Source: Macrostomum lignano (taxonomy: Eukaryota). Taken from it: DNA of 64,000 nt. Every line of letters starts with the position of its first letter. The first letter of the stretch is position 1. Location of the stretch: positions 94,144 to 158,143 of the forward strand of contig NIVC01002599.1 of the NCBI GenBank assembly GCA_002269645.1. Direction: 5' to 3'. The notes under the pieces are model-generated. The model was given only the letters and a program-made list of their open reading frames with translations, was not told the DNA's origin and made no database searches. Below, piece after piece: positions 12,404 through 42,469 of this stretch. The translations under genes were made by a program, and so were the position numbers.

Positions 12404-12734
<331 letters not shown>

Positions 12735-19098: not shown

Positions 19099-21122
19099 AT
19101 GGTAAGTACATTCGAGAAGATGCTCAATATGCTTGCTCTTAATAGCTGTTCTGCACCGTAGATCGGTTGATTCGAAAGCTCTGCTTTGAACAACCATCAC
19201 AGGTGGACCATTTTTGTAAGCCGCCGACAATGTTAGAGATGCCGGAGCTGAAGCGCATTCTGCACGAGGACGACGCGGAGTCGCTGATCGTCCAGCTCGA
19301 GCTGGCCAAGCCCCTCTCTCTGCAGCAGATTCTGCAGCTTGGTATCGAGCAGCTGGGTGATGACGCCGGCACTGCTGACTGCATCAAGTGCGGCAGGTCC
19401 GACTTCACGTCGTTCCTCATCGCTCACTCAACCCTGCTGGAAGTGGCCGCGTGCACACTCGCTCTCAACTGTGTCACTCTCCTCATCGACGAGTTGGAGG
19501 CCGCAGCGGAGTTTGTCGCTGACGCCGACGCCGACGCCGACGCTCTTCATCGGGCAGTCGGAGGGTCAGTCGTGCCGCTGCACTGTCTCATTGTGAAGCT
19601 GTTCACTCTGAGAGGAGGCGGCGGCGGCGGCGGCGATGCGGCATTCGAGGACCGGGCGGTGAGATTCGTGCGCCAAGTGTCGGCCGCGCGGCCTCGCTTC
19701 TTCCGCGTGTGCGCAGAGAAGGAGGCGTTCGGCCACAATGCTCTCGAGCTGGCAGTCAGTCTGCAGCTGTTCTCACTGGCTGAGTGCATTCTCGAGTCGG
19801 GCAAGTACTGCGGCGAGGTCAGTCTCGTAGCGGGCGTCAAGGTGCAGCGAGTGGATCTGAGCGAGTACGACTTCGATACCGGGGAGCGATACAACAAGAG
19901 CCCCCTGAACATGCTGGCCTTCATGGCAATGAAGGAATTGTCGCATCCTCTGAAAAGATTTCTGGAGCATCGCATTATTGCCGAAAGCACACGCAGAATT
20001 TCTAGTCGCATTAGACGCCCGATGCTCACCAGTGCAATCGTGCTCACCATCTACAAGATTATCATTTTGCTGTTTGCTCCAGCCAGCATCTACACCAGAG
20101 TGACTGTGACGCGCTTCAAAATCAGCGGGAACTCCAGCTCGTGTCCCCTGTTTGGAATTCATTTATTGTGGCAATCTATTTGTGAGCACGCGCTTGTTCA
20201 AGCTGTGATGAACGTCTCTCTCGTTGCATTCAATTTGGAGTGCTGCGTGATTCTTGTTTCAAGCGTAGCTCTGGCCAAATCTCTTACCGTTCAAAAGTCG
20301 TACACTGAAACACTGCTGGAATTTGTGTTCACCAGGAGCCAGATTCCTATAAGAATCGGCATTTTGCTTCTCTCCATCATTATGGCGTACTTTTCAGTGA
20401 GAACTAGAACTGAGCCAACTTCGATGATCCCGCTGAACGAAACCCGACCGCATCAGCTTGTAGCTTTGGACTATGCTACAAGTATCATCTACTCCCTAAC
20501 GGCACTAACCTTGGTTTACGATTGGATGCTGGTCATCGAGAAAATGGTTCTGCTTTGGGATGTCATGGGGATCTTTGCGTTTTTTGTTGCAATCATTTTG
20601 GTCGTGATGTCGCTGTTTTGCTGGTTAATATCGCTTGTTGTGCCATGCGACCCAGTGTTTCATCCCGAGATGTCAGCGGAGATTTCCTACACTCTTCTTA
20701 CTTTCTATCTGCTGCTAAATAACGGAGGTTTGTCACGAGATTCGATCAGAACACTGGGCGCTGTGTTCCTGTTGACTCACGCGCTCATTGTTCTTTTCTG
20801 CTTCAACTTCCTTATCGCGCTGCTGTCCCAGCGTCTGTCCGTGGCATCGGAAAACCTGCATCACCTCTGCACGGCCTACCGAATGCACACGTACCATTTT
20901 GTCCAGATGGCTTTCAGGAACTTGCGGAATGCTCTTGGCCTAGATAGGCGGTGTACATGTGCATGCATCGAAAAACAAAAAGACAATGAGTTCACGCCTT
21001 GGAGATTCTGCCTAATAACGGAAGCTAAATCGGATTTTCAAAGCGGTGATGCATTATCAGCGAACCGAGAAAATAGCAGCAAGGATGACTTACGTAGAAG
21101 TACGGGAAACCTCGTACTATAG
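19099..21122 (+). CDS. Divergent TRPV-like (TRPV5/6-type) channel, paralogue 1 (exons 19099-19101 ATG, 19203-21122; 640 aa)
   Basis: Ankyrin-like repeats (GHNALELAVSLQLFSLAECIL); linker VDLSEYD...KSPLNML aligns with TRPV6 YDLTEID...QSLLELI; ~6 hydrophobic segments; pore-like FYLLLNNGG; S6 LFCFNFLIALLS. ATG|gtaagt intron 19102-19202 keeps frame. Confidence 0.75.
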
Positions 21123-22089
21123 GTGGGAATTAGGAAAGCGATTTTTAAAAAATCAATGGAGCAATACATAAGACAGGCATATGTAGATGTGGTACTTCGT
21201 AAATACTCTCTTGCTTTACTTACAGTAGACAAAAAGCACATTTTAACGTTTAAGGTTTAGAGATCTCTGCATACTGTACATGTTTAGCTACGAAACTCAT
21301 TATAGCGCTACAATAAGCGGATTATTTTGGACCAGAGGTTATATATCGGTATTCGTTGCGATTTATCGACAGGTAAATTTACGAGCACCTGTAGAGCACA
21401 CTTATTCTTTTATGATGCATAACGACCTTTTCTAACTTTTTCTTTACACATACTGAATAATTCTTATCTATTTATCTTTTATTTAGCGCAATACCAAATT
21501 AAGTTCTAGAGTTTGAGTTTCATTATGAGTTATTGTCTAAATAAAACTGCTTAAATAAATATTGGTTGAAGTTTTGAGATAAAATTGAAGCATTTTCATC
21601 CTATTTCAAGTAGCTATTATGAAATAACTTTTGAAATAAAAAAATGCATTATTCTACGGTTACCGGCCAAACTGGCGACAAGACGATCCGGCGACAGATA
21701 TTTAATTGTCCTAATTTGTTGATCCTTGGCTGATAGAGGCGGCAGGCAACACAGTAAGCGAAGATGTGAAAGTTTTAATTGTTTGTTCGAATTTTTTTCG
21801 AAGCTGTTTTAATGCGTGCCCCGAGGCATTTGTTGACTGTACCTAATTTTTATGCATGTGCGGTAGTCAATCAATCTATGCATGTAACAATAATCAATGG
21901 AGCGATCCAGAAAATTGAAATTGTGTAAATGTGTCTTTTTATCACATGCAACAATTAATAATGCACATGCCAAAAATTGGAAGAATCGACCCCCGATATA
22001 GAATTTAATACTTGAAATCCACTGTAGCGCGGTAAAAAGCACAGAGCGCAGCAGAAAAATTAAAAGGAGACTCAAAACATTTCGTCATT

Positions 22090-23905
22090 ACAAACAGACC
22101 GCGATCACAGTCAATCTCGGACCAGTTGCAAGGCTCGTTGAGCTTGCTGCACGCGACTCCGCCTACAGTCGGAAGCACAGCTTCTGCAAGCGTTGGTACG
22201 TACACGTACCGCGCTGCCTCCGACGCTGTACGACCTGCCGGACCAGATTGTCTCTGCTGATGAATGAGTGTATAATTGCATGTGCCGGTGTTGAAGGCGC
22301 CTGGCTGGGCTGGAGCGAAGTCTGGGATTGGCAGAAGAGGCGCAGTTGGAGCGGGCGCGTTGAGCACCTCGCGGTAATGGGTGGCCAGCACCCAGCATCC
22401 ACCCATATTGCGGTGCTCGGTGGAATCAGCGCCGACAATGGTGTTGGGCCTGGGCTTCGTGCCAATCAGCTGGTTAATGGCCCTCCAGGCAGCACTATGG
22501 CGGCAGTTGTCAGTGGCGAGTTGGATTTCGCTCACAGCCTCTTCGATGAAGGTTTCAGTCCGCTGGGCGTAGATGCGCTGCAGCTCGTCCCTGGCAGCAC
22601 TGGCCTGGTCGCTGTCATGACCGTGGAGTGCAGCAGTGCTCTGCACATGCCGCCTTGCCTGGGAGATGATGAGATCGAGGTCCCACAGGGCCTTTGGATG
22701 ATTTGCCTGTCATCGCCAGCAGCGATGCAGCAGCCTCGACGGCGTGATGGAAAGATTCGAAGGACTCGGCTGGAGCAGGAGTGGCGGCAAGCAGCTTGCG
22801 TAGGAAGACCTGCCGCATGTCCGGGTTTCTCAGGTCGGCCCAGAGCGGGTGAGGTGGCGCAGGCCCGAGCTTTTGTCAGTGCAGATCAAAGTCGCATGCC
22901 ACCAAGCGGTGATCAGATTGGACGCAGTCCGGGCGGATGTTGAGGACTCTGCGCACCCTGGACCTCAGAGCAGTTGGGCAGAGAATCCAGTCCAACCGAG
23001 TCGTTCGCCCGTTGGGGCCAGAGAGAGTTGAAAGCTTGCTGAAGCGCTGTCGCATGGTGCCATTGACAGGCATCAGATCTCTGACCTCGATAAAACTGGA
23101 TAGAAAAGGTGAGTTGGCATTGGGGATGCCACTGGCAATGGCGAGTTGAAGTGCACCAGCAACAATGACAGAGTCACGAGCAGGGATGGAATCAAGCATG
23201 CAGCCCAGAGTGTCGTAAAATGCTTCTGTCTCAGATGGATCTTTGCTGGTCCGGGGGGGGGGGCCGTTGGAGCATAGACGCAGATGATGTGAAGTCGCCT
23301 GTCTTTTCCGGCAAAGGAGGCGTGTTCCAGGCGCTCGGATGGAAACCTGATGTCCAGCAGCGCTCTGGATGCGGCGAGCGACAGCATCGGCTGGGCCTAA
23401 GCCGATACCTCCAGTTCCCTGTGGAGTGGCTGGGGCAGCCTTGAATTGCCAGCTTAAACCCAGATCCATAGTCTCGTCAGGGTTCTGCCGCCGATGTTCT
23501 TGAACTGCCAGGATGGAGATGTTGAGGTCGGCCGCCAGCCTTGTCAGCTCCTGCAGTTTCCATGTCTGACTGAGAGTGCGGGCATTGAAGGTGGCGACCC
23601 GAATCTGGTTTTGAAGATGCGGCTGACTTGTCTCCTTGGCTCTGCTTGTGCGCGCATTGCGGGGGGCCGAGTTGGGTGGAAGCGATGGCCCTTGAGGCTC
23701 CGGTTGGCAGACCGCGAGTCCTGGTGGGTCCGACGAGCATTGTCGCGGAGCTCTTTGCGCCACGCATTAAAGGGCTGCCGGCGGCGCTGAGAGGCTTCCT
23801 GACTCCGTCGTCCCCTGTGAGTCACCAGCTTGGTTGCGCCGCGCTATCAGGACTGATGGCGGCTCCATTGGCACCTGGCCGATGCTCTGGCCGAAGCATC
23901 TGGCC
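22090..23905 (-). mobile_element. RTE-like non-LTR retrotransposon, inverted 5' part (5'UTR, APE endonuclease, linker), degenerate
   Basis: IRVATFNARTL, ILAVQEHR, GTGGIG, CVYAPT, RLDWIL...SDHRLV (APE motifs); linker AWRAINQLIG; ends near SGPAGRTASEAA..LAEAVLPTVGGV, just before the RT core. Frameshifted. Confidence 0.9.
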
Positions 23906-25192
23906 GGCCGGAGTGATTCTGCACAACCGCCTCCTGCCCGGCCTCAACCCGCTGCTGCTGAGCCTCCAAAGCGGCTTCCGCCCGGGCAGGTCCACCACCG
24001 AGCAGGTTGCCACCATCCGCTCTGTCATTGAGGCCTCCAAGACCCGCCAGCGCTCCGTGTCAATCATCTTTGTCGACTTTCGCAAGGCGTCTGACTCGGT
24101 GTCCAGGCCTGCGATCTCTTGGCTTTTATCTCACTATGGTACCTGCTGCGCTGGTGAGCGCGGTGATGGACATCTACCGCGACTCCAGGGCTTTTTTCAT
24201 GTCGAGCGACGGCCCCACAGAAAAGTTCGGCACCAGCTCAGGCGTCCTTCAGGGCGACACGCTGGCTCCTCTGCTCTTCCTCGTGGTTGTGGACTACGTG
24301 CTTCGTCGGTCCCTCCGCGAGGATGACAGCTACTTGCTGGTCTCACGCCGAAGCTCCAGACACCCTGCTGTTTCGCTTGGCGTATGCTAACGACATCCCG
24401 CTGCTCTGCCGCGATCCAGCTGCTGCCCAGCGCGCTCTCACAAGGCTCTGCGACGAGGGTGCCCGTGTTGGGCTGCTGGTGAACGCTCGCAAGACGGAGG
24501 CGCTGCACGTGTGCACGAATACCGCCCCAACTCTAACGCTGCCCAATGGAGACCGCATCGCGGTGTGCGAGGACTTCCGGTTCCTCGGCGCCCTGGTGAT
24601 GAGCCCCGATGCGATTGTCTCCGACAGGAGGAACCAGGAACGTTTTTAATTCAGCTGCCAGAGACGACCTGAAGGTGCGCCTGTTCCGCGCGGCCATCGA
24701 GCCGATCCTGATTTACGGCATGGAGGCTGTGCCGCTGACCAAAACGCGAGAGCGAGCCTTGGACGCGCTTTACCGATCGCTGCTGCGCTACGCACTGGGC
24801 GTGCACAACCCGGATCGCCTGCCGACCAACGCTCTGATGGCCCGCGCTCGAACTCCGCCCCTGAGCGCTACCCTGCGCCGGCGCCGTCAGATGCTGCTGG
24901 GCCACTGCCTACGGACCCTGGGTCGCGTTGCGCCCGTCCCTCTGGCCCTGGCCATGCTGCACTGGCCGACCGTGCAATTGCGCCGCGGCCAGGCCCGCAC
25001 TGCCACTCTGGCGGACTGCCTCATCGCTGACTTGCAGGCGCTTGAGCTCACCCCTCAGGCTGCTGCTGCCTGCCCCTCCCGCCTGTTCTGCGAGCGCATG
25101 TGCGCAAGGGGCCTCCCCTCTGCGTCCTAATATATATAATAATAGAATAATAAATAATATTTATTATTATATTATATTATATATTATTTCCT

Positions 25193-25227
<35 letters not shown>

Positions 25228-25260
25228 TATATATATATACATATATATTATTATTATTAT
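23906..25260 (+). mobile_element. RTE-like non-LTR retrotransposon, 3' part (RT to end, TA/TAA-rich tail), degenerate
   Basis: NRLLP...QSGFRPGRSTTEQ, FVDFRKASDSV, GVLQGDTLAP, AYANDI, LIYGMEAVPLT, RRRRQMLLGHCLR; stop at 25130 followed by (TA)/(TAA) tail. Confidence 0.9.
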
Positions 25261-28822: not shown

Positions 28823-29349
28823 ATGCTCACAATTGGCTTCTATTGTTTAGCATCTCTGCCACTGCCTGCACATTACCAGCCGTGTGTCAGGTCTCTACAC
28901 AGGCAATTATTATCAACCAGTGCCGCTGTCAAAGCTGCAATGCGAGTTCTAAATGTTGCTGAAAAGAACGATGCAGCCAAAAGCCTGGCCGCTATCATGT
29001 CCAACGGTCAGATGCGCCGCCGAGATGGCCAGTCGAGGTATAACAAAATCTACGAATTCCAGTGCAACCTGCTTGGCCAGCAGTGCCAGATGACCATGAC
29101 CTCGGTTAGTGGCCACTTAATGAACTATGACTTCACTCAGCAGCACAGAAAGTGGCTCAGCTGCCACCCGTCGGCCCTGTTTGATGCCCCCGTTGTTAAA
29201 CAGATACAGCGGGACTACCAGCCAATCAGGGACACCCTGACCCAGCTGGCCAAGTCCGCTCAGCGGCTGGTCATCTGGACAGATTGCGATCGAGAGGGCG
29301 AAAATATCGGCATGGAGATTGTCAACGTCTGCATGGCCTCGAATCCCAG
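28823..29349 (+). CDS. TOP3A: DNA topoisomerase III alpha, exon 1 (second in-frame ATG at 28940)
   Basis: MRVLNVAEKNDAAK, MTSVSGHL, LVIWTDCDREGENIG (TOPRIM). Donor at 29350, phase 2. Confidence 0.95.
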
Positions 29350-29376
29350 GTAATGGTCGTTCAGGCAATTCTTTGG

Positions 29377-31295
29377 GATTCAGAATGGGGATATGGATTC
29401 TCGTGCAGGATTCAGAATGGGGATCAGGATTCTCGTGCAGGATTCAGAATGGGGATATGGATTCTCGTGCAGGATTCAGAATGGGGATATGGATTCTCGT
29501 GCAGGATTCAGAATGGGGATATGGATTCTCGTGCAGGATTCAGAATGGGGATATGGATTCTCGTGCAGGATTCAGAATGGGGATATGGATTCTCGTGCAG
29601 GATTCAGAATGGGGATCAGGATTCTCGTGCAGGATTCAGAATGGGGATCAGGATTCTCGTGCAGGATTCAGAATGGGGATCAGGATTCTCGTGCAGGATT
29701 CAGAATGGGGATCAGGATTCTCGTGCAGGATTCAGAATGGGGATCAGGATTCTCGTGCAGGATTCAGAATGGGGATCAGGATTCTCGTGCAGGATTCAGA
29801 ATGGGGATATGGATTCTTGTGCAGGATTCAGAATGGGGATATGGATTCTTGTGCAGGATTCAGAATGGGGATATGGATTCTTGTGCAGGATTCAGAATGG
29901 GGATATGGATTCTTGTGCAGGATTCAGAATGGGGATATGGATTCTTGTGCAGGATTCAGAATGGGGATATGGATTCTTGTGCAGGATTCAGAATGGGGAT
30001 ATGGATTCTTGTGCAGGATTCAGAATGGGGATATGGATTCTTGTGCAGGATTCAGAATGGGGATATGGATTCTTGTGCAGGATTCAGAATGGGGATATGG
30101 ATTCTTGTGCAGGATTCAGAATGGGGATATGGATTCTTGTGCAGGATTCAGAATGGGGATATGGATTCTTGTGCAGGATTCAGAATGGGGATATGGATTC
30201 TTGTGCAGGATTCAGAATGGGGATATGGATTCTTGTGCAGGATTCAGAATGGGGATATGGATTCTTGTGCAGGATTCAGAATGGGGATATGGATTCTTGT
30301 GCAGGATTCAGAATGGGGATATGGATTCTTGTGCAGGATTCAGAATGCGGATCTACAGTCTCCGAGCGCGACCGACCAGCTGCGAAGAAAAATGACGAGC
30401 TAAAATTCTCACCCAGATCGATCTATCTACCTAACTTCTTACCTGGATTCTTGTGTGGGATTCTGAATAGGGATCGGGATTCTCGCGGAGGATCAGAATG
30501 GGGATCGGGATTCTCGTGCGGGATTCAGAATGCGGATCGGGATTCTTGTGCAGGATTCAGAATGCGGATCGGGATTCTTGTGCGGGATTCAGAATAGGGA
30601 TCTGGATTCTCGTGCGGGATTCAGAATGCGGATCTGGATTCTTGTGTCGGAGTCAGAATAGGGATCTGGATTCTCGTGCGGGATTCTGAATAGGGATCGG
30701 GATTCTCGCGGAGGATCAGAATGGGGATCGGGATTCTCGTGCGGGATTCAGAATGCGGATCGGGATTCTTGTGCAGGATTCAGAATGCGGATCGGGATTC
30801 TTGTGCGGGATTCAGAATAGGGATCTGGATTCTCGTGCGGGATTCAGAATGCGGATCGGGATTCTTGTGCAGGATTCAGAATGCGGATCGGGATTCTTGT
30901 GCGGGATTCAGAATAGGGATCTGGATTCTCGTGCGGGATTCAGAATGCGGATCTGGATTCTTGTGTCGGAGTCAGAATAGGGATCTGGATTCTCGTGCGG
31001 GATTCTGAATAGGGATCGGGATTCTCGCGGAGGATCAGAATGGGGATCGGGATTCTCGTGCGGGATTCAGAATGCGGATCGGGATTCTTGTGCAGGATTC
31101 AGAATGCGGATCGGGATTCTTGTGCGGGATTCAGAATAGGGATCTGGATTCTCGTGCGGGATTCAGAATGCGGATCTGGATTCTTGTGTCGGAGTCAGAA
31201 TAGGGATCTGGATTCTCGTGCGGGATTCAGAATGCGGATCTGGATTCTCGTGCAGGATTCAAAATGGGACCAGGATTCTTGTGCAGGATTCGGAA
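29377..31295. repeat. 32-bp minisatellite filling TOP3A intron 1
   Basis: Unit ggattcagaatggggatatggattc(t/c)(t/c)gtgca; homogeneous block 29377-30350, ~90-bp unique spacer, diverged higher-order block 30440-31295. Confidence 0.97.
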
Positions 31296-31445
31296 TATCC
31301 TAAATAGTTTGTGATGTGGTTATTTGGGGGGATATCTGAGTCTAGATCCTGCATCAGAATCCTACGGTTCAAACAAATGATTTGAAGATGCATGGTTTAA
31401 AATTTTTAAACATTTTGAACAGTATTCCACGCCTGTCTCCCACAG

Positions 31446-31821
31446 ACTTGACGTATACCGAGCCAAATTCTCAGAGATCACCCGGCCTGCAGTGCAGCGG
31501 GCCCTGGCCTCCCTGACCCGCATGGACGAGCGGGTCAGCGACGCGGTGGACGCCAGACAGGAGCTGGACCTGCGCATCGGGGCCGCATTCACCCGGTTCC
31601 AGACGCTCCGGCTCAGGCAGGTGTTCCCGGCCGTTCTGGCCGACCAGCTGGTCTCCTACGGCAGCTGCCAGTTCCCCACTCTCGGCTTTGTTGTTGAACG
31701 ATTTAAAGAGGCCGAACGGTTTCAACCGGAGCCGTTCTGGCGGCTGCGCGTGCTGGCCGAGTCGCCGGACACCGGACAGAGCGCCGAGTTTCTGTGGAAG
31801 CGCGGCCGAGTCTACGATCAG
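31446..31821 (+). CDS. TOP3A: TOP3A exon 2
   Basis: cacag acceptor; LDVYRAKFSEIT...RQELDLRIGAAFTRFQTL...SYGSCQFPTLGFVVER; donor at 31822, phase 0. Confidence 0.95.
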
Positions 31822-31894
31822 GTTTGTAGGGCCCCGACTTGCTGTTTGGTAGGACTTCAGGATTCTGTGCAATTCTATAGTGTTTCAATATAGT

Positions 31895-33040
31895 ATTCTC
31901 AGTAGTTTCCATGATGAGATTCTTAATAGTTTTCATGAGATTCTCGGTAGTTTCCAGGATGAGATTCTTGGTAGTTTCTATGATAACCTCTGTAGTTTCC
32001 ATGATGAGATTCTCAATAGTTTTCATGATAAGATTTTGGTAGTTTCCATGATGAGATTTTGGTAGTTTCCTTGATGAGATTTTGGTAGTTTCCATGATGA
32101 GATTCTCGCTAGTTTCCATGATGAGATTCTCGCTAGTTTTCATGATGAGATTTTTGGTAGTTTCCATGATGAGATTTTGGTAGTTTCCATGATGAGATTC
32201 TCGGTAGTTTCCATGATGAGATTCTCGCTAGTTTTCATGATGAGATTTTTGGTAGTTTCCATGATGAGATTTTGGTAGTTTCCATGATGAGATTCTCAGT
32301 AGTTTTCATGATAAGATTTTTGGTAGTTTCCATGATGAGATTTTGGTAGTTTCCATGATGAGATTCTCGGTAGTTTTCATGATGAGATTCTCGCTAGTTT
32401 TCATGATGAGATTTTTGGTAGTTTCCATGATGAGATTTTGGTAGTTTCCATGATGAGATTCTCGGTAGTTTCCATGATGAGATTCTCGCTAGTTTTCATG
32501 ATGAGATTTTTGGTAGTTTCCATGATGAGATTTTGGTAGTTTCCATGATGAGATTCTCAGTAGTTTTCATGATAAGATTTTTGGTAGTTTCCATGATGAG
32601 ATTTTGGTAGTTTCCATGATGAGATTCTCGCTAGTTTCCATGATGAGATTCTCGCTAGTTTTCATGATGAGATTTTTGGTAGTTTCCATGATGAGATTTT
32701 GGTAGTTTCCATGATGAGATTCTCGGTAGTTTCCATGATGAGATTCTCGCTAGTTTTCATGATGAGATTTTTGGTAGTTTCCATGATGAGATTTTGGTAG
32801 TTTCCATGATGAGATTCTCAGTAGTTTTCATGATAAGATTTTTGGTAGTTTCCATGATGAGATTTTGGTAGTTTCCATGATGAGATTCTCGGTAGTTTTC
32901 ATGATGAGATTTTTGGTAGTTTCCATGATAACCTCTGTAGTTTCCATGATGAAATTTTTGGTAGTTTCCATGATAATTTCTGTAGTTTCCATGATAATCT
33001 CGGTAGCTTCCGTGATGAGCTTTTTAGTAGTTTCCATGAT
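31895..33040. repeat. 23/24-bp minisatellite filling TOP3A intron 2
   Basis: Unit gtagtttccatgatgagatt(ttg/ctcg). Confidence 0.97.
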
Positions 33041-33156
33041 TCACAATGTTATTTTGAGACTTGGGCGAAGAATGTCGATATTGATATTCAGCCAGATAAT
33101 CTCAGAGCTCAGCATCTCAAAATGCGCCTGGCTGTCTCGCCTCCTACTTTCCGCAG

Positions 33157-33570
33157 GCTGTCGGCCAGATGTTTCTGGCCCACGTGCTCGAATCGCCCAT
33201 AGCAACAGTAATTAGCGTCGAGTCCAAGCCCAAGAATCGATGGCGCCCGTGCGCGCTGGACACGGTGGAATTCGAGAAGCTGGCCTCCCGCAAACTGCGC
33301 ATCAACGCCAAGGAGGCGATGCACATCGCCGAGCGCCTGTACACGCAGGGCTACATCTCCTATCCGCGCACGGAGACGAACATATTCCCTAGGGATTTTA
33401 ATTTGCGCGGCCTAGTTCAGACTCAAACTGCGGACAATCGGTGGGCCCAGTTTGCCCAGCGAGTGGCCGAGCATGGGCCAAGCCCGCGGAATGGCAAGAA
33501 GTCTGATCAGGCCCATCCGCCTATTCACCCGCTGAAATGCGGTGACGGACTGGCTAATAATGAGGCCAAG
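33157..33570 (+). CDS. TOP3A: TOP3A exon 3 (catalytic tyrosine)
   Basis: ccgcag acceptor; LDTVEFEK...LYTQGYISYPRTET...DQAHPPIHP; donor gtgagc at 33571. Confidence 0.96.
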
Positions 33571-33654
33571 GTGAGCCTGCGTTCTTGTTGTCAGCAACAT
33601 GTGTTCTTCACTTTTTAAACCTGGAGACCTCGAAAGCCTATGGTATCTTTGGGA

Positions 33655-34550
33655 CTGAGATAACTCCGGATTTAATGCCCCCTGAGATAATTATGGATTT
33701 AATGCCCCCTGAGATAATTATGGATTTAATGCCCCCTAAGTTAATTCAGAATTTAATGACCCCCAGAAATAATTATGGGTTTAATGACCCCCTGAGATAG
33801 TTATGGATTTAATGACCCCCTGAAATAATTATGGATTTAATGACCCCCCTGGAATAAATCTGGATTTAATGACCCCTTGAGGTAATTATGGATTTAATGA
33901 CCCAGATAATTATGGATTTTATGACCCCTAGGATAATTCTAGATTTAATGACCCCCTGAGATAATTCTGGGTTTAATGACCCCCTGAGATAGTTATGGAT
34001 TTAATGACCCCCTGAAATAATTATGGATTTAATGACCCCCCTAGAATAAATCTGGATTTAATGACCCCTTGAGGTAATTATGGATTTAATGACCCAGATA
34101 ATTATGGATTTTATGACCCCTAGGATAATTCTAGATTTAATGACCCCCTGAGATAATTCTGGGTTTAATGACCCCCTGAGATCGCTCTGGTTTTAATATC
34201 CCCCTGGGATAATTCTAGATTTCATGACCCACTGAGATAATTATAGTTTTAATGACCCCTGAAATAATTCTGGGTTTAGTGAGTCAATGACCCCCTGAGA
34301 AGATTATGGATTTAATGACCCCTGAGATAATCATGGATTTAATGACCCCTGAGATAATTATAAATTTAATGACCCCCTGAGATAATTATGCATTTAATGA
34401 CCCCCTGAGATAATTATGCATTTAATGACCCCCCGCCGTGATAATTATAGATTTAATGATTCCTGAGATAATTATAGATTTAATGACCCCCTAAGATAAT
34501 TATAGATTTAATGACCCCTAAGATAATTATGGATTTAATGACCACTGAGG
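33655..34550. repeat. 27/28-bp minisatellite filling TOP3A intron 3
   Basis: Unit gagataattatggatttaatgaccccct; ~192-bp internal block duplication (33841 vs 34033). Confidence 0.96.
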
Positions 34551-34721
34551 TCAATCAGCATGCCATGAAAATTAAGTCACGACCCCTGTGAGGTAACCCC
34601 CTCGGTTGATTTCAACCGCTATGACCCACTTTGACACCGTGAGGAAACTTAACAGATGTTAAAGACCTTGTGAGTATGCCAAATAACTATTCTAGATGTA
34701 CTCTATTACCCATCCCGCCAG

Positions 34722-35234
34722 GTATTCGAGCTGATCGCTCGCCACTTCCTAGCCTGCTGCTCCAAAGACGCCGTGGGTCGGGAGGTCAAAGTCGGCATAG
34801 ACATCAACGGCGAAGGCTTCGAAGCCAAAGGCCTGACCATCATTGAGCGCAACTACCTGGAGGTGTACATCTACGATAAATGGGTTGATAAAGAACTGCC
34901 GCTGTTCCAGCAGGGCCAGCAGTTTCAGCCTAGCAACATCAGCCTGATTGACGGGTGCACGACAGCTCCGGCCCTCCTAACCGAGGCCGACCTGATCGCC
35001 CTGATGGACCGGCACGGCATTGGAACAGATGCTACTCACGCTGAGCACATTGAAACTGTGAAACAGCGCCTGTATGTCGGGCTGCAGGACGCCAGGTATC
35101 TGGTGCCTGGCCAGCTGGGCATTGGCCTGGTCGAAGGCTACGACGCAATGGGATTTCAAATGTCCAAGCCGGACCTGCGCTCGGCGCTGGAAGCCGATTT
35201 GAAAGCCATCTGCGAGGGCCGGCGTTCTAAACAG
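34722..35234 (+). CDS. TOP3A: TOP3A exon 4
   Basis: VFELIARHFLACCSKDA...LTEADLIALMDRHGIGTDATHAEHI; donor gtaagg at 35235. Confidence 0.95.
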
Positions 35235-35249
35235 GTAAGGCAACTTCTC

Positions 35250-35465
35250 TGTTAGAGTGTCGGACTCACGGCTGAAAGGTCGGGGGTTCGATTCCCGACC
35301 CACTCGGGACAATTTGTGTCCTTGAGCAAGACACTTAACTCTGCATTGCTTCAGTTCACCCAGCTGTAAAATTGGTGCCAGCATTAGCTGGGATAATTAA
35401 GGGGTGTGTGGCGACCCCCCAGTCCTTGGACTGAACAGCCGTAGAATCGAACCCGCGACCTTTGA
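35250..35465 (+). mobile_element. tRNA-headed SINE (CORE/Deu-Nin-like central domain) in TOP3A intron 4
   Basis: Partial A-box gttagagtg, B-box ggttcgattcc (35285-35295), then gtgtccttgagcaagacacttaac...cagttcacccagctgtaaaa, resembling the conserved CORE/Nin-type SINE domains. Confidence 0.75.
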
Positions 35466-35636
35466 GGCAAGCTTCTCGTTTCTTAGAATAGGATTTTAAA
35501 GCTACTTAATAGGCAGTAGTATCGATGGCATATTTATTGTTTTTGACAGTAAAATACTAAATAAATGAGGTTGAGATACTTAGCAATCAATAATATCGAT
35601 TTTTCGTTCTCTCTCTCTGTTTTTCTCCCATCTCAG

Positions 35637-37127
35637 GACGTGCTCAGCTTCCATATTGAACGCTACAGGCGCGTATTTGATGAAGCGTGTCGCCAGGCCA
35701 ACCTGCTGGACGCCCGGGTCGGCCACTACTTGGACGAACAGCCGGCCGAAGCGCCCCAGCTACCCGCTGGCGAAGCCGGTGGTCAGGCCAATTCGACCAA
35801 CTTGGTGAGGCGCTGCCCGCAGTGCTCAGCGGCCGACATGGCGCTCAAGACTAAGCGAGACGGCTCCAGTTACTACGTTGGCTGCCTGGCCTATCCGACC
35901 TGCAAGCGCGCTGTCTGGCTGCCCGAGTCTGTCCGCCGGGCCGCCGTGTCCGATCAGAACTGTCCGACTTGTTCAACGCCGGGCGGCGCGGGCGGACAGG
36001 TGCGAAAGCTGACGCTGCAGTTCAGCCAGGCGGCTCCGATGTCATTCCGCGACTTGGCCGAGCACACCATCTGCGTCTTCTGCGATCCCGACTATGTTGG
36101 CGCGTTTGGCGGCGCTGCTAGCACCGTTGGAGGCGGAGGTGGCGGTGGCCAACCAAAACCATCCACTGCTATTAGTTTCCATGCCAACGAGCTGCAGGCA
36201 GCATCGATGCAGCAGCGTCTGTTTCTGCAGCCGCAGGATCGGCAGACTTTTGCTGTGCAGGCGCCAGCGCCAATGCAGCAGCAGCCGCCGCCGCAGCCTC
36301 CAGGAGGTGCCGCCAACGCCGCTCCGGGCACCTGCGCTTGCGGTACACCTGTACGAGAACTGACTGTACGCAAAGAAGGCCCAAATAAGGGCAGACAATT
36401 CTACAAGTGCGCCACTGGTACCTGCAATCATTTCCAATGGGCTGATGCGCCACCTGGAGGCGGAGGCGGCGGTGGCGGTGGATTTGCTGGTGCATCGTTT
36501 TCAGCGTCGTCCACGCAATACGGTGGTGGCGGCGATTTTGGAAGCGGTGGAGGCGGTGGCTTCGGTGGAAACAGCGGCTTCGGCGGTGGTGGAGGCGGTG
36601 GCTTCGGTGGTGGTGGAGGTGGCGGAAGCAGCGGCTTCGGCGGTGGTGGAGGCGGTGGCTTCGGTGGTGGTGGAGGTGGCGGAAGCAGCGGCTTCGGCGG
36701 TGGTGGAGGTGGAAGCGGCGGCGGAGCTGCCTCAGGCGTCAGTTGCAAGTGCGGCGAGCCGGCCCGCGAGCGGACGGTGCAGAAAGACGGGCCAAACAAA
36801 GGCAGGCCGTTCTTCGGCTGCGCTAAGCCGATGAATCAGAGCTGCAACTTCTTTCAGTGGGGCGACGAGCCCGCTGGCGGCGGCGGCGGTGGTGGCGGCG
36901 GCGGCTTTGGCAGCGGCAGCAGCAGAGGTGGCTTCAGCCGTGGCGGCGGCGGCGGCGGCGGCCTCCAAAAGGCCAACAGCCATGGCAACCGACGCTCCGG
37001 CGGCGGCGGCGGCGGCGGCGGCGGCAGCGACGGCGGTGGCGGTGACGGGCAGAAAAAGCAACGCAAGTGCGGCGCCTGCGGACAGCCGGGCCACACTAGA
37101 AACCGATGCGCAATGTTTATCAACTAG
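35637..37127 (+). CDS. TOP3A: TOP3A exon 5 (C4 zinc ribbon, two GRF zinc fingers, Gly-rich linkers, CCHC knuckle)
   Basis: CPQC...GCLAYPTC; CACG...VRKEGPNKGRQFYKC; CKCG...VQKDGPNKGRPFFGC; RKCGACGQPGHTRNRC. Five exons join in frame: 1067 aa from ATG 28940, 1106 aa from ATG 28823. Confidence 0.95.
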   Translation, partial: DVLSFHIERYRRVFDEACRQANLLDARVGHYLDEQPAEAPQLPAGEAGGQANSTNLVRRCPQCSAADMALKTKRDGSSYYVGCLAYPTCKRAVWLPESVRRAAVSDQNCPTCSTPGGAGGQVRKLTLQFSQAAPMSFRDLAEHTICVFCDPDYVGAFGGAASTVGGGGGGGQPKPSTAISFHANELQAASMQQRLFLQPQDRQTFAVQAPAPMQQQPPPQPPGGAANAAPGTCACGTPVRELTVRKEGPNKGRQFYKCATGTCNHFQWADAPPGGGGGGGGGFAGASFSASSTQYGGGGDFGSGGGGGFGGNSGFGGGGGGGFGGGGGGGSSGFGGGGGGGFGGGGGGGSSGFGGGGGGSGGGAASGVSCKCGEPARERTVQKDGPNKGRPFFGCAKPMNQSCNFFQWGDEPAGGGGGGGGGGFGSGSSRGGFSRGGGGGGGLQKANSHGNRRSGGGGGGGGGSDGGGGDGQKKQRKCGACGQPGHTRNRCAMFIN

Positions 37128-38057
37128 CAGGCCCTTAAGCCAGTGTTTTATTGTTTCGATCCGATTTTCGACTTACTTTCTCGATGCAAAGCAAGCAGCA
37201 TTTCTTCCTAGCTTTTTTTACTAGTTACTTTCTCAATAGTAAAGCGGTGTTATCTGTGTTGCTACCAGGCAACGAATATAGCATGTAAATCTTGCAAAAA
37301 TATATCAAGAAACGTTTATATTGTTTATTTTTTGTTTCGTTTGTCAAGCATGTTTTTTATAAGTTTTAAATTCTAATTTGTACATTGGCAGTGTTTTTCT
37401 TTGGCGTTTCTTGTTTACCGTATTAGGGGAGCTGCATTGGAGGAGCTGCATATAGTCGCAGGGGGGCGTTGGCCGCCCCTGGCGTAATCACTGAGGCAAT
37501 TCTGCCCATTCCGCTGACTTCTGAACACATACAAGCGGGTCAATACTGTAGGCAGCATATGCACTCTATAACTTAGTGATTAAATAAATTACAGGGAATG
37601 GAGTTTTTTGTTTCTTGAGCACAAAATTTGCAATTACTTTATAGTCTTCACACTCAGTAGTAAGCCTTCATTAAATTAGAATAAAATGCCTGATTAATAG
37701 GCCATAAATAAATTTATTTGTTTTAATTTATGAATTAGGGTTGTGGCGCGAGAGTCACACGCTTTTGGCACCTGAGTTGCTCCGCCTTAGCGTTGCCCAA
37801 ACTGAGGTATTGAATTTCTCGGCTTTGCCTGACTAATAGATTAGAACTCTCTCAAAGCCTTTTGTGCTGCTGTCTTTTGTCCTTGTTGGTAGGCTCTCAA
37901 TTCAACTTTAAAATTGAAATAATAGTTCCCGTTGTCATTGGCAACGTGGATATACAAGCTTGCCGGATGAGCAGAAAAGGCAGACAGATCGGAATGAAGC
38001 GATCGATGTGGAGAGCAAAGTTGAGAAGTCAAGCTTAGAGGTTTGACTTTGGCGTCC

Positions 38058-38546
38058 ATGGCAATTCTGTATCGAGCTCAGCCGCTTCTTGTCCTCACAC
38101 TTTATGCTGTTGCTGTCCGGCTGTCGCGGGCGGCCACTCGCCTCGGCGGCTACTGCGACAGCCAGCCGGACGCTTTCGCTTGCAGTCCGGGGCGCGTGGC
38201 CGGCGCCACAATCGGCGCCATCTTATCTGTCGGCCTGTTAGTTGGAATCATCGCCGCCTGCTGTCTGTGGCGCCATCGGGCTAACAAAGTGCGCTGCAGC
38301 AGGTCAACCGCTCGGCAGCAGCTACCAGAGCCGGCTGGGCAGATCCCCATGGTCCCAGCGATGTGGCCGCCGCCTCCGCCGTACAGTCCGCCAGCAGTTG
38401 GAGCTGGCGCTCTCCGCAATGCCGGCTTTGCTGCCGACGAATGCTTTGAAGAGCCGCAACAGCCGCCGCCGACGCCACCGCATCTAGATTCCATTCAAGA
38501 CAGTCCGCTGAAGCAGAAGCAGCTGGAAATACCACCAGTCAGTTAG
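38058..38546 (+). CDS. Small single-pass membrane protein with PPPY motif (Shisa/CYYR1/WBP1-like architecture), 162 aa
   Basis: Hydrophobic N-terminal signal, short ectodomain with 2 Cys, TM ATIGAILSVGLLVGIIAACCLW, basic stop-transfer RHR, cytoplasmic PPPPPYSP. GC-rich single ORF. Confidence 0.65.
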   Translation: MAILYRAQPLLVLTLYAVAVRLSRAATRLGGYCDSQPDAFACSPGRVAGATIGAILSVGLLVGIIAACCLWRHRANKVRCSRSTARQQLPEPAGQIPMVPAMWPPPPPYSPPAVGAGALRNAGFAADECFEEPQQPPPTPPHLDSIQDSPLKQKQLEIPPVS

Positions 38547-38961
38547 AAGTTGAATCAGCATGTACGCTGCTTCTTTCAAAGTGCACCGCCTTCTTTTCAT
38601 CGCGAAAGTTTTTTTTTAAGTTAGATTTTTTAGGTTAACAAACTTCACCGAAAGACACTTAACTAGGATTGAGCGCTTCTTTAATTAAATACTAACTCAA
38701 GTTAAATACATTTACTACATAAGGTTACACTTATAAGGTAACTTTAAAGTTGACAGAACACTTGAGCTCTTTATTACGTCAGTGGAATAGTTTCGTTCAG
38801 TATGCTCTAGAGAATGCACAGCTAGGCCTGAATGGGGTTCCGCCATAGACAAATCCGATTTCACTGAACGCACTGGCGATACGGCCGGCCTCCAGCTGAT
38901 TTCTAAGAAAATCAAGTGTAGCGTGTTTCTGCTTCAGTTGCCCGTGTGTCTACTCGTAGAT

Positions 38962-39101
38962 TCGGGTTGGCAAACTTTTTACTTAAAGGGCCAGATATGC
39001 GAGGGGAGATGAGAGGGGCGAATAGAAGAGAGCTGAGAAGAGACAAACCTTGAACAGGTCGGATTGCTATTGTGAATTTTCAAAGGATCCGAGGGCCGTA
39101 T
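38962..39101 (+). mobile_element. hAT MITE copy (same family as 47315-48016) lacking a recognisable right TIR
   Basis: gggttggcaaactttt...aagggccagat...gaagagagctgagaagagac...ccttga...ttgctattgtgaa..ttcaaagga.ccgag.gccg is shared with the 47-48 kb copy. Confidence 0.8.
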
Positions 39102-39650
39102 AGTAAATTTGTACAGCTACTGCAGAAATTTGTACAGCTACTGCAGTAAATTTGTACAGCTACTGCAGTAAATGTGTACAACCACTGCAGTAAATTGGTA
39201 CAGCTACTGCAGTAAATTTGTACAGCTACTGCAGCAAATGTGTACAGCCACTGCAGTAAGTTTGTACAGCCACTGCAGTAAGTTTGTACAGCTACTGCAG
39301 TAAATTTGTACAGCTACTGCAGTAAATGTGTACAACCACTGCAGTAAATTTGTACAGCTACTGCAGTAAATTTGTACAGCTACTGCAGTAAATTGATACA
39401 GCTACTGTAGTAAGTTTGTACAGCTACTGCAGTAAATTTGTACAGCTACTGCAGTAAATTTGTACAGCTACTGCAGTAAATTGATACAGCTACTGCAGTA
39501 AGTTTGTACAGCTACTGCAGTAAATTTGTACAGCTACTGCAGTAAATTTGTACAGCTACTGCAGTAAATTGATACAGCTACTGCAGTAAGTTTGTACAGC
39601 TACTGCAGTAAATTTGTACAGCTACTGCAGTAAGCTTGTACAGCTACTGC
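39102..39650. repeat. 22-bp minisatellite (~25 copies)
   Basis: Unit gtaaatttgtacagctactgca. Confidence 0.97.
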
Positions 39651-40341
39651 GCAGTTGACTGTCAAAGTAATCTAATCAAAAACGTTTTTCCTATGCCAGT
39701 CGCAGATAAATCTCGTGTACGCTTGTACTTCTGATAATATTGGCACGTACATTGTACTCTTTAGAGTTTGAATTCAAATTATAACTTCTGTCTAAAACTA
39801 CCAAAACACAAACGATATTACAAGTACAGTCCAAAAATGTTCACGAACCATTAATCGGTTTTATGAATAAAAATATATAAACTTCCTAGAAACCCATTGC
39901 CTTTTTAGGCCTTTGATTGGATGGAGGTCTTTCAGGTCTATGAGTGGATAAAATAGTGTTAGTATGGCACCCCATATATGGATACAGTATACACAAGATA
40001 ATTCTATAGCTGCATTCAAATACTGATTGAGCACGGCTAACTCTGTGGTCAGTCGCCCATATGCTGCATAAACAATGGTGATAATTAGCTGGTGACGGAT
40101 GCCAAACATTAATATTAACGTACACTGTACCTATCCAGTAACGGTTCCTTATATTTACCCACGGCTAACTTGCTGAGTCAATAGACTCGGTGTGGGATCT
40201 GTTAGGCTATATATGCAGCGATAGAAAGCAAGCAAATGCTCTGCGAGAAGGCAAAGGCTAATCGTACATGTACGTGACCAATCCGGGAGGTTCTCCTGAT
40301 CTTTGAAATCCATTAGCAATCACAACGGCGTTCAGTTTGCT

Positions 40342-42265
40342 ATGGTGAGTTTTTGCAGAGCAGTTGATGAGGTGTTTATCCATCTATACATCATATCGCG
40401 CATCAATGTAGGAATCCGCGCAGCTTGAGCAGATCCCGGTGCTGAAGCGCATCCTGCACGAGGACGACGCGGAGTCGCTGATCGTCCAGCTCGAGCTGGC
40501 CAAGCCTTTCTCTCTGCAGCAGATTCTGCAGCTTGGCATCGAGCAGCTGGGTGAAGACGCCGGCACTGCTGACTGCATCAAGTGCGGCAGGTCCGACTTC
40601 ACGTCGTTCCTCATCGTTCACTCAACCCTGCTGGAAGTGGCCGCGTGCACACTCGCTCTCAACTGTGTCACTCTCCTCATCGACGAGTTGGAGGCCGCAG
40701 CGGAGTTTGTCGCTGACGCCGACGCCGACGCCGACGCTCTTCATCGGGCAGTCGGAGAGTCAGTCGTGCCGCTGCACTGTCTCATTGTAAAGCTGTTCAC
40801 ACTGGGAGGAGGCGGGGGCGGCGGCGGCGGCGGCGGCGGCGATGCGGCATTCGAGGACCGGGCGGTGAGATTCGTGCGCCAAGTGTCGGCTGCGCGGCCT
40901 CGCTTCTTCCGCGTGTGCGCAGAGAAGGAGGCGTTCGGCCACAATGCTCTCGAGCTGGCAGTCAGTCTGCAGCTGTTCTCACTGGCTGAGTGCATTCTCG
41001 AGTCGGGCAAGTACTGCGGCGAGGTCAGTCTCGTAGCGGGCGTCAAGGTGCAGCGAGTGGATCTGAGCGAGTACGACTTCTTCTCGGGGGACAGATACAC
41101 GAAGCACCCACTGAGCATGTTGGCCACATCCGCAATGGAGGATACTCCAGATGCTTTAAAAAAGTTCATGGATCATGGCATTGTTAGCCAATGGTCACAG
41201 AGACTCACCAACTCCATGCGGAGTACGATGCTTATACGAGCTCTCGTGCTGACCGTGTACAAGATCCTGCTTCTTTCTGTCGGCTCGTCGTGTGTTTACT
41301 CGGGCGTGACCGTGACCCGGGTGCGGAGCGGCCAGGCGAACGACAGCTGCCCGCTCTACCCGCTAAACCAGCGCTGGCACTCAAACTGCCAGCGGCCTTC
41401 TGCAAAGCTCGGTCTTGTGCTCCTCCTCATCTGCTACGTCGCTGAGAGCCTCCTGACCGTCTGCTCGAACTGCGTGTTCGCCTGCATGACACGAGGAGCC
41501 GTTTCGCGGTGTCGCGCCATCGTCCAGCACGCTTTGAGCAACAGCCAGATGCCCGTGGCTGTCGGTATCCTGCTTAACTCTGTCCTGACGCTAGTTCTCG
41601 CGATCGGCGCGGTTGAACACGCGTCTTCTCTGACCCTGGCCATCACCGATCGGGACGTCTACTTGAAGCTGCTGGACTACTCCATCAGCCTGCTGTACAT
41701 TCTGACCATCTTAACAATTGTGTTCGACTGGATGCTGGTGGTTGAGAGCATCGCCCTGCTGTGGAAAGTGATGAGCACCTTTGCCTTTTTCCTGGCCATC
41801 ATATTCAGCTTAATAGCCCTGTTTCTCTGGCTAATCGCCCTGATTGTGCCGTGCGAGCCCAGCTTCAATGTGAACGTGAACAGCAACTTGTTCACGGAGG
41901 GCCTGCTCGTATTCTACCTGCTGATTAACAATGGCGGCTTGTCCAGTGAATCTATCAGAGCGCTCGGCATCGTCTACCTGGTCATGCACGCCCTTATTGT
42001 GCTGTTCTGCTTCAACTTTCTAATTGCCCTGCTGTCTGAGCGGCTGTCCAAGGCTGCTAGCAGCAGTCGCTACGTCTGTTTGGCCTATCGGCTGCACGTG
42101 CGGTTCATTGGGCTGATGGCGCCGGCTTATCTAATCCGCTTGTCACCTGGATCCAAGACTGTAGGCCGCCTCTGCTGCTGCTGCCGCTGCTTGAAGAGCT
42201 TTCTGGGGAAAATTGTCCCAGATTGTTGTTTCCTCTATCGATTGGCTGAGCCTATGACTAACTGA
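40342..42265 (+). CDS. Divergent TRPV-like channel, paralogue 2 (exons 40342-40344 ATG, 40412-42265; 618 aa)
   Basis: Same architecture as paralogue 1; ATG|gtgagt intron 40345-40411 in phase 0; pore FYLLINNGGL; S6 LFCFNFLIALLS. Confidence 0.75.
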
Positions 42266-42469
42266 GCTTTGTTGAGCCAACTCGTTGCTTTGTTTACAGC
42301 TTCCTGCCCTTCTCTACTCTACTTAGCTGTAAGTAGTTTGCAACGTATTTTATTGATTAGCAACTGAACGACCTATAAATTAGAAAAGTTGACAGTTTAT
42401 GCAGAATACGCGGATGTTAAGAAGCTATATATAATTATTTTTTCTTTGCTCTGGTAAACAGGTGGTGCC

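What the first reader, a model, noticed from the sequence alone, without database searches (positions are those of the whole stretch)
19248..41080. TRPV-like paralogues share a near-identical N-terminal tract but have diverged transmembrane domains (gene conversion or chimera)
Seen: 19248-19874 and 40442-41080 differ by about ten substitutions and a 12-bp poly-Gly expansion. Identity collapses right after gagtacgacttc (DLSEYDF). Downstream, the S4-S5-like stretch is ~60% identical in amino acids by my count, S1-S3 are much less so, and the 5' flanks and introns are unalike. Known: the TRPV ankyrin/linker region contributes to assembly and ligand regulation. Inference: recent interlocus gene conversion (or exon shuffling) homogenises the cytoplasmic module while the sensor/pore module diversifies, possibly allowing heteromers with different gating. 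This could be a modular receptor-diversification system.
Basis: partly seen in the sequence, partly recalled or inferred. Interest (0 to 1): 0.72.

Follow-up and report, generated by a model that had tools for sequence, protein, structure and literature searches.

The report
Gene conversion between two TRPV-like genes
Two old, neighbouring copies of a very divergent TRPV-like ion-channel gene in an animal genome have had the first ~630 bases of their coding sequence recently copied from one to the other. This is an ordinary case of gene conversion between paralogues, not a new receptor-diversification system.

Summary
19248-19874 and 40442-41080 differ by 11 substitutions and one 12-bp (GGC)n indel, about 98% identity. 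The last 189 bp are identical, and identity collapses exactly after GAGTACGACTTC.

Synonymous divergence is 0.048 inside the tract and saturated everywhere downstream. Protein-level selection therefore cannot explain the pattern.

Both genes are long single ORFs on the + strand, 21 kb apart, with a TOP3A-like gene between them. Each appears to have an ATG immediately followed by a short intron.

The 3' breakpoint lies in mid-exon, inside a motif conserved across the family (D-L/V-S/T-E/D-Y-D/E ... R-Y-x-K-x-P). The 5' edge lies about 10 codons into the same exon. This is a two-ended homologous replacement, that is, interlocus gene conversion. It is not exon shuffling or a simple crossover chimera. 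GC at four-fold sites suggests gene B was the net donor.

"TRPV-like" holds only by remote homology. Pfam finds nothing, but profiles reach TRPV3/4/5/6. The first ~138 residues of the tract have no detectable ankyrin signal.

The heteromer and "modular diversification" ideas are untested speculation. This is an ordinary mechanism in a poorly sampled gene family.

The parts
19248..19874 (+). Converted tract, copy in gene A (codons for LKRILHEDD...VDLSEYDF)
   Evidence: 98% identical to 40442-41080; dS 0.048; max-chi2 breakpoint after 19874
40442..41080 (+). Converted tract, copy in gene B; carries a 12-bp (GGC)n expansion at 40811-40822
   Evidence: GC at four-fold sites (0.74) matches the rest of gene B (0.72), so B is the likely net donor
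19221..21122 (+). Gene A main exon, one uninterrupted ORF to the stop. An alternative acceptor would start it at 19203. An in-frame ATG lies at 19230.
   Evidence: ORF list and translation; six hydrophobic segments S1-S6
19099..19220 (+). Gene A putative start codon as the last 3 nt of exon 1 (ATG 19099-19101), followed by a phase-0 intron (GTAAGT at 19102; acceptor AG at 19201-19202 or 19219-19220)
   Evidence: read from the sequence; inference, no RNA data
40412..42265 (+). Gene B main exon, one uninterrupted ORF to the stop. It has no in-frame ATG before the tract, so an upstream exon is needed.
40342..40411 (+). Gene B putative start codon (ATG 40342-40344) followed by a 67-nt phase-0 intron (GTGAGT...TAG, 40345-40411). 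This is the same layout as in gene A.
   Evidence: read from the sequence; inference
19875..21119 (+). Gene A unconverted part: linker helices, pre-S1, S1-S6, pore loop and C-terminus
   Evidence: pS 0.63-0.88 against gene B; GC at four-fold sites 0.546, different from the tract (p = 2e-4)
41081..42262 (+). Gene B unconverted part: linker helices, pre-S1, S1-S6, pore loop and C-terminus

Best explanation
Genes A (about 19.1-21.1 kb) and B (about 40.3-42.3 kb) are old duplicates of a lineage-specific, very divergent TRPV-like six-transmembrane channel gene. They lie on the same strand, 21 kb apart, with a TOP3A-like gene between them.

Almost all of their sequence has diverged to saturation at silent sites. 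A 627/639-bp stretch is the exception. It encodes the N-terminal cytoplasmic domain up to the beta-hairpin that follows the last ankyrin-like repeat, and it has been overwritten by non-reciprocal homologous recombination (interlocus gene conversion).

The tract has two ends inside homologous coding sequence, so it is a patch and not a crossover product. Its silent-site composition matches gene B, so the net direction was probably B to A. GC-biased repair is the alternative reading of that composition.

Differences thin out from 5' to 3': 3.3%, then 2.0%, then 0% over the last 189 bp. This suggests more than one overlapping event, with the latest next to the 3' boundary.

The flanks are now only about 57-65% identical. 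That is below what recombination normally uses (mostly over 80% identity, with about 200 bp of near-identity). The tract has therefore most likely been kept convertible by repeated conversion since the duplication, while the rest escaped and can no longer be converted.

Shown here: the tract, its boundaries, the silent-site contrast and the family relationship. Inferred: recurrence, direction, and any role of selection.
For: The tract and its sharp 3' boundary are seen. dS is 0.048 inside the tract and saturated outside it. Both ORFs are intact, and neither tract end falls at an intron. Ancient-level homology continues right across the 3' breakpoint. The motif VDLSEYDF|xxGxRYxKxP is contiguous in the relatives P0004, L001 and L002, and corresponds to the TRPV6 segment YDLTEIDS. 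Upstream of 19248/40442, four more codons are similar (10 of 12 nt plus a codon indel). Similarity then falls to chance level, although both exons continue and both genes share the ATG|intron layout. GC at four-fold sites is 0.74-0.76 in the tract, 0.716 in the rest of B (p = 0.52) and 0.546 in the rest of A (p = 2e-4). The published ranges fit: tracts of 50 to several hundred bp, identity above 80%, a MEPS of about 200 bp, and a rate that falls with distance (PMC3924818).
Against: Only two sequences are available. No orthologue, third paralogue or outgroup was found, so incongruent trees, the classical proof, cannot be shown. No reads are available. The 5' boundary is only about 10 codons from the exon start, so 'homologous but diverged' sequence on that side rests on very few bases. 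Flanks this diverged make a first-time conversion mechanistically awkward. The explanation therefore needs recurrence or an unseen donor, and neither is demonstrated. The zero-difference run at the 3' end is only weakly significant (p about 0.02, post hoc).
Confidence: 0.8

Rival explanations
1. One-off chimeric origin rather than conversion between A and B. Possible routes are a partial duplication, an unequal crossover inside a larger array, reverse-transcriptase template switching between two paralogous mRNAs, or independent conversion of A and/or B by a third paralogue outside the window.
For: Both genes are almost intronless while their neighbour TOP3A has many introns, which fits a retrogene history. 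The flanks are too diverged for easy homologous recombination. The window shows only 64 kb.
Against: A crossover or template-switch product has one breakpoint and carries the donor's 5' flank or 5' UTR. Here identity stops about 10 codons into the exon, and the upstream exon sequence, intron and flank are unalike. The join is in exact homologous register and in frame, inside a conserved motif. No other copy is present in the window. A third-paralogue donor would still be interlocus gene conversion.
Confidence: 0.1
2. Assembly or polishing artefact: the near-identity was created by a mis-join or by consensus polishing with multi-mapped reads.
For: No read data could be examined. The region is full of minisatellites.
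Against: A mis-join could only swap which flank sits next to which copy. It cannot create two copies. Polishing can homogenise only sequences that are already similar enough to cross-map, not ones at about 60% identity. The copies keep 11 substitutions and an in-frame 12-bp indel, both reading frames stay open for over 600 codons, and there are no Ns or junction scars.
Confidence: 0.04
3. Selection alone: the N-terminal domain is under such strong constraint that it has not changed since an ancient duplication.
For: The tract is coding, and dN/dS inside it is about 0.25.
Against: Silent third positions are 85-100% identical inside the tract and 20-50% outside it. dS is 0.048 inside against saturation outside. 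Protein-level constraint does not preserve silent sites, and no RNA family or other overlapping feature was found.
Confidence: 0.01
4. One reading: conversion is real, but it is kept in place by selection. Under this view the two channels must share an identical cytoplasmic assembly module, for example to form heteromers, while the sensor and pore parts diversify.
For: The tract ends at the beta-hairpin after the last ankyrin-like repeat. In solved TRPV structures that region contacts the neighbouring subunit (established knowledge, not tested here). S1-S3 are the most diverged parts.
Against: Nothing here distinguishes this from neutral conversion with an arbitrary end point. There is one pair, one tract and no expression or interaction data. 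Five of the 11 differences in the tract change amino acids, so the module is not strictly identical. The linker helices and pre-S1, which are also cytoplasmic, lie outside the tract.
Confidence: 0.1

Closest known systems
Interlocus (non-allelic) gene conversion between nearby paralogues that produces mosaic divergence. Examples: GOT1 paralogues of Tigriopus californicus (PMC3728101), tandem HMA4 copies of Arabidopsis halleri (bioRxiv 10.1101/2025.10.29.685298), and the review of rates and tract lengths (PMC3924818).
   Same: Same chromosome and orientation, tens of kb apart. The tract is a few hundred bp long. Silent sites are homogenised. A sharp boundary separates the tract from regions that have escaped conversion.
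   Different: The contrast is extreme (dS 0.05 against saturated). Only one short island of identity is left in otherwise very old duplicates, rather than islands of divergence in mostly identical copies.
TRPV channels (vertebrate TRPV1-6; invertebrate OSM-9/Inactive)
   Same: Six transmembrane segments with a pore loop between S5 and S6. The S6 motif is N-F-L-I-A-L, against TRPV N-M-L-I-A-L. A helix follows S6. A final ankyrin-like repeat and a beta-hairpin motif (D-L-S-E-Y-D against TRPV6 Y-D-L-T-E-I-D) precede the membrane domain. The only significant matches among solved structures are TRPVs.
   Different: No Pfam domain is detected. The first ~138 residues show no ankyrin signal. The pore loop reads NNGG where TRPV3 has GLGD and the relatives have NMID, so the acidic filter residue is missing. 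The TRP-box tryptophan is absent. The proteins are short, at 608-630 aa.
TRPVL, the proposed eighth animal TRP family, described from cnidarians and an annelid (mentioned in bioRxiv 10.1101/2021.11.14.466824)
   Same: TRPV-like channels that fall outside canonical TRPV, from non-model invertebrates.
   Different: This is a lead only.

Membership tests
Interlocus gene conversion | A tract of significantly higher identity than the flanking homologous sequence | tested here: met
   Max chi2 = 419, with 0 of 1000 permutations reaching it; breakpoint after 19874/41080
Interlocus gene conversion | Silent sites homogenised as much as replacement sites | tested here: met
   dS 0.048 inside the tract; pS 0.63-0.88 outside
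Interlocus gene conversion | Both ends of the tract lie within homologous sequence, and the flanks are not co-duplicated (a patch, not a crossover) | tested here: met
   The 3' end is inside a conserved motif with old homology continuing past it. The 5' end is about 10 codons into the exon, and the upstream exon, intron and flank are unalike. The 5' side rests on few bases.
Interlocus gene conversion | Incongruent trees for converted and unconverted parts when orthologues or further paralogues are included | not testable with these tools
   No orthologue or close paralogue was found in any collection
Exon shuffling | Module boundaries coincide with introns | tested here: not met
   Both boundaries lie inside one uninterrupted ORF in each gene
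TRPV subfamily of TRP channels | Six transmembrane helices with a re-entrant pore loop between S5 and S6, and the S6 motif N-x-L-I-A-L | tested here: met
   Hydropathy. A profile without P0004 aligns S5-pore-S6 to TRPV3/4, E 1.4e-5.
TRPV subfamily of TRP channels | N-terminal domain of six ankyrin repeats | tested here: inconclusive
   A and B have no Pfam Ank hit. Only residues from about 139 onward align with the relatives' last repeat. The relatives have sub-threshold Ank hits. The family profile aligns with the ankyrin domain of TRPV5/6 from about residue 160. The AlphaFold model was unusable (pLDDT 37).
TRPV subfamily of TRP channels | Beta-hairpin linker motif Y-D-L-[ST]-x-I-D after the last repeat | tested here: met
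   VDLSEYDF aligns with P0004 YDVSDYEF, which in turn aligns with TRPV6 YDLTEIDS
TRPV subfamily of TRP channels | Acidic residue in the selectivity filter (G-M/L-G-D or T-I-I-D) | tested here: not met
   A and B read NNGG at the aligned position. The alignment in this loop is only moderately reliable.
TRPV subfamily of TRP channels | TRP box (I-W-x-L-Q) in the helix after S6 | tested here: not met
   A helix is present and aligned, but it reads LAYRLH / TAYRMH, with no tryptophan
TRPV subfamily of TRP channels | Phylogenetic placement inside TRPV rather than TRPVL or another TRP family | not tested
   No reference set of TRP families was available. All significant matches among solved structures are TRPV.

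The most novel reading that the evidence does not exclude
A lineage-specific, highly divergent TRPV-like channel family with no Pfam signature and a pore loop lacking the usual acidic residue. In it, recurrent gene conversion is held in place by selection, so that neighbouring paralogues share one cytoplasmic assembly domain while their sensor and pore domains diversify. That would give combinatorial heteromeric channels.
Probability: 0.08. Interest if true: 0.55.

Novelty: new member of a known kind. Interest (0 to 1): 0.25.

Why it matters
This is a clean textbook example of partial gene conversion. One short island of near-identity survives in duplicates that are otherwise saturated at silent sites, with a breakpoint resolved to the base.

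In practice it is a warning for anyone building trees or dating duplications in this gene family. The N-terminal third and the rest of the gene would give completely different answers.

The underlying family may interest people who catalogue TRP diversity. It comprises short, nearly intronless TRPV-like channels with very few database relatives. That is separate from the finding, and nothing here opens a long-standing question.

Tried and rejected
- Pfam on both proteins gave no family, even at E <= 1.
- phmmer of gene B against solved structures gave only poly-Gly noise.
- Word-indexed protein searches with B alone and with a 7-sequence alignment found nothing.
- The exhaustive HMMER search of 1.84 billion representatives gave only four weak hits, all unnamed ENA metagenome proteins. 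No orthologues were available for tree tests.
- Exact look-ups of three ORF versions found nothing on record.
- AlphaFold2 on the two-sequence alignment gave pLDDT 37, which is unusable, so no fold search was run. A deeper alignment could not be submitted because the relatives came from tools whose output the predictor does not accept.
- Rfam over the whole window gave nothing.
- tblastn of A and B against the window found no third copy.
- Taxon identification through the TOP3A-like exons showed only that this is an animal. The nearest relatives are 54-61% identical: a tardigrade, a beetle, a fluke and nematodes.
- A literature search for gene conversion in TRPV5/6 found nothing relevant.
- Exon shuffling, a simple unequal crossover, a retro-chimera and nucleotide-level selection were each considered and rejected, for the reasons given under rival explanations.
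Full report
THE WINDOW. The sequence is eukaryotic. It has GC-rich exons in AT-rich non-coding DNA, short GT...AG introns, reverse-transcriptase debris and more than a dozen minisatellite arrays. A multi-exon TOP3A-like gene lies at about 28.8-37.1 kb on the + strand. Its best database relatives are animal TOP3A proteins at only 54-61% identity: a tardigrade, a beetle, a fluke and nematodes. The source is therefore an animal from a poorly sampled lineage. I could not narrow it further.

THE TWO GENES. Gene A is one uninterrupted ORF running to the stop at 21122, with an in-frame ATG at 19230. Gene B is one uninterrupted ORF from 40412 to the stop at 42265.

Gene B has no in-frame ATG ahead of the shared tract. 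It does have ATG|GTGAGT at 40342-40350 and an acceptor TAG| ending at 40411. This gives a 67-nt phase-0 intron directly after the start codon. Gene A has the same layout: ATG|GTAAGT at 19099-19107, with in-frame acceptors at 19202 or 19220. These models are inferred from sequence only.

Both genes are on the + strand, 21 kb apart, with LINE debris, the TOP3A-like gene and an unknown ORF between them. tblastn finds no third copy in the window.

CHECK OF THE OBSERVATION. Apart from satellites, the only internal repeat of the window is 19237-19936 vs 40431-41142.

- Base by base, 19248-19874 and 40442-41080 differ at 11 positions. Copy B also has a 12-bp insertion (40811-40822) that lengthens a (GGC)n poly-Gly run.
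- The last 189 bp before the breakpoint are identical.
- A maximum chi-square scan places the breakpoint exactly after 19874/41080, the end of GAGTACGACTTC. The statistic is 419, against a maximum of 21 in 1000 permutations.
- Third codon positions are 85-100% identical inside the tract and 20-50% identical downstream.
- Nei-Gojobori dS is 0.048 inside the tract (dN 0.012). Outside, the proportion of silent differences is 0.63-0.88, which is saturated.

WHAT THE PROTEINS ARE. Pfam finds nothing in either protein. Direct comparison with solved structures finds only poly-Gly noise. Hydropathy gives six membrane segments, with a short loop between the fifth and sixth.

An exhaustive profile search of 1.84 billion representative proteins returns just four weak relatives, all unnamed metagenome proteins. 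One of them, P0004 (646 aa), matches TRPV6, TRPV3 and TRPV5 at E about 1e-14, including part of the ankyrin domain and the YDLTEIDS linker.

- A profile of A, B and the three other relatives, without P0004, hits only TRPV3 and TRPV4 among all solved structures. The match is E 1.4e-5 across S5, the pore loop, S6 and the following helix.
- Two single-exon relatives were recovered from metagenome contigs: L001 and L002.
- With them, the family profile reaches TRPV3 at 1.7e-22 and aligns with TRPV5/6 from the ankyrin domain to the TRP helix.
- A profile-profile comparison of A+B against P0004+L001+L002 gives 97.8% probability, E 1e-12, over columns 139-560.

"TRPV-like" is therefore justified, but A and B are outliers. 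The first ~138 residues match nothing. The pore loop reads NNGG where TRPV3 has GLGD and the relatives have NMID. The TRP-box tryptophan is missing. Whether they belong to TRPV proper or to the proposed TRPVL group (bioRxiv 10.1101/2021.11.14.466824) was not testable. The AlphaFold model from the two-sequence alignment was useless (pLDDT 37).

WHERE THE BREAKPOINTS FALL. The 3' breakpoint cuts through a motif that is contiguous and conserved in every relative. The last ankyrin-like repeat (G-x-x-x-L-E-x-A) is followed by a hairpin, then D-[LV]-[ST]-[ED]-Y-[DE], then R-[YR]-x-K-x-P. Old-level similarity continues immediately after the break, for example GGGGA., GATACA and the residues G.RY.K.PL.ML.

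At the 5' side, four more codons upstream of 19248/40442 are still similar (10 of 12 nt plus a one-codon indel). Similarity then drops to chance, although both exons continue for another five or six codons. Neither end is at an intron.

MECHANISM. Silent sites rule out protein-level constraint.

- A crossover or template-switch chimera would have one breakpoint and would carry the donor's upstream sequence. Here there are two breakpoints, and the upstream exon, intron and flank are unalike.
- Exon shuffling needs intron-bounded modules, and these boundaries are in mid-exon.
- An assembly mis-join cannot create a second copy. Polishing cannot homogenise sequences that are only 60% identical. 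The two copies also retain 11 substitutions and an in-frame indel.

What remains is a two-ended, in-register homologous patch, that is, interlocus gene conversion. Its size (about 630 bp), the same-strand arrangement and the 21-kb spacing are all within the usual range (PMC3924818).

GC at four-fold degenerate sites is 0.74-0.76 in the tract, 0.716 in the rest of B (no difference, p = 0.52) and 0.546 in the rest of A (p = 2e-4). The tract looks native to B and foreign in A. This favours B as net donor, although GC-biased repair could produce the same signal.

Differences thin out from 5' to 3': 3.3%, 2.0% and 0% in three blocks. The chance of no difference in the last 189 bp is about 0.02. This hints at several overlapping events, with the latest next to the 3' edge.

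The flanks are now about 57-65% identical, and conversion is mostly seen above 80% identity with about 200 bp of near-identity. The most economical history is therefore that this segment has been converted repeatedly since the duplication, while the remainder diverged past the point of no return. That history is inferred, not shown.

The tract covers the N-terminal domain up to the hairpin. In solved TRPV structures that hairpin takes part in contacts between subunits (established knowledge, not tested here). The idea of a shared assembly module is therefore not absurd.

Nothing here supports it over neutral conversion, however. There is one gene pair and one tract. Five of the 11 differences change amino acids. 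The cytoplasmic linker helices and pre-S1 lie outside the tract. No expression or interaction data exist. I rate it at about 0.1 as an overlay on the conversion explanation.

VERDICT. This is a real and very clean partial gene conversion between two old paralogues of a divergent TRPV-like channel. The mechanism is ordinary, and mosaic divergence through interlocus conversion is well described (PMC3728101; bioRxiv 10.1101/2025.10.29.685298; PMC3924818). The gene family is poorly sampled and mildly interesting in its own right. Interest is 0.25. Novelty: a new member of a known kind.

Noticed in passing
window 50760-55293: A 4.5-kb minisatellite with a 20-bp unit (ATGAGATTATCCAAAACCCA), about 227 copies at about 90% identity. 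It has a strong strand skew in composition.
   Followed up: no
window 29376-31296, 31895-33040, 33655-34543, 39102-39650, 42464-43310, 43999-45069, 45586-46722, 49414-49950, 60138-61052: An unusually dense set of unrelated minisatellite arrays with 16-41-bp units, each 0.5-2 kb long. Three of them lie inside introns of the TOP3A-like gene, and three follow directly downstream of gene B.
   Followed up: no
window about 28823-37127 (+): A multi-exon TOP3A-like gene with Toprim, Topoisom_bac, Zn_ribbon_Top1 and two or three GRF zinc fingers. Its Gly-rich tail contains a 57-bp coding repeat at 36567-36709. The nearest database relatives are animal TOP3A proteins at only 54-61% identity.
   Followed up: partly
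window 19099-19220 and 40342-40411: Both channel genes appear to place the start codon as the last three bases of exon 1, followed at once by a short phase-0 intron. The intron sequences themselves are unalike. This fits an old whole-gene duplication.
   Followed up: partly
window 20691-20717 (gene A) and 41900-41926 (gene B), pore loop: The pore loop reads LL(L/I)NNGGLS in both genes. The position aligned to the acidic filter residue of TRPV3 (GLGD) and of the metagenomic relatives (NMID) is glycine. The TRP-box tryptophan after S6 is also absent.
   Followed up: partly
window 23628-25130 (+), 13782-14588 (-), 22005-23763: Fragments of reverse-transcriptase (LINE-like) ORFs with weak RVT_1 hits, lying between gene A and the TOP3A-like gene and upstream of gene A.
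   Followed up: no
window 8544-9992 (+): A 482-aa ORF with a sub-threshold WW-domain hit and a long charged coiled-coil-like region. Its identity was not determined.
   Followed up: no
window 12405-12734 and 47386-47930: An (ACT)n microsatellite of about 110 copies that reads as a poly-Thr ORF, and a purine-rich (GGAGA)n array that reads as an Arg/Glu-rich ORF. Both ORFs are probably artefacts of the repeats.
   Followed up: no
L001 1294-3069; L002 272-2152: Two metagenome contigs (JAAUXT010149714.1 and JAAUYA010281480.1) each carry a single-exon TRPV-like gene of about 590-625 aa with weak ankyrin hits. Together with P0004 they are the closest recognisable relatives of genes A and B. The source organisms are unknown.
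   Followed up: partly
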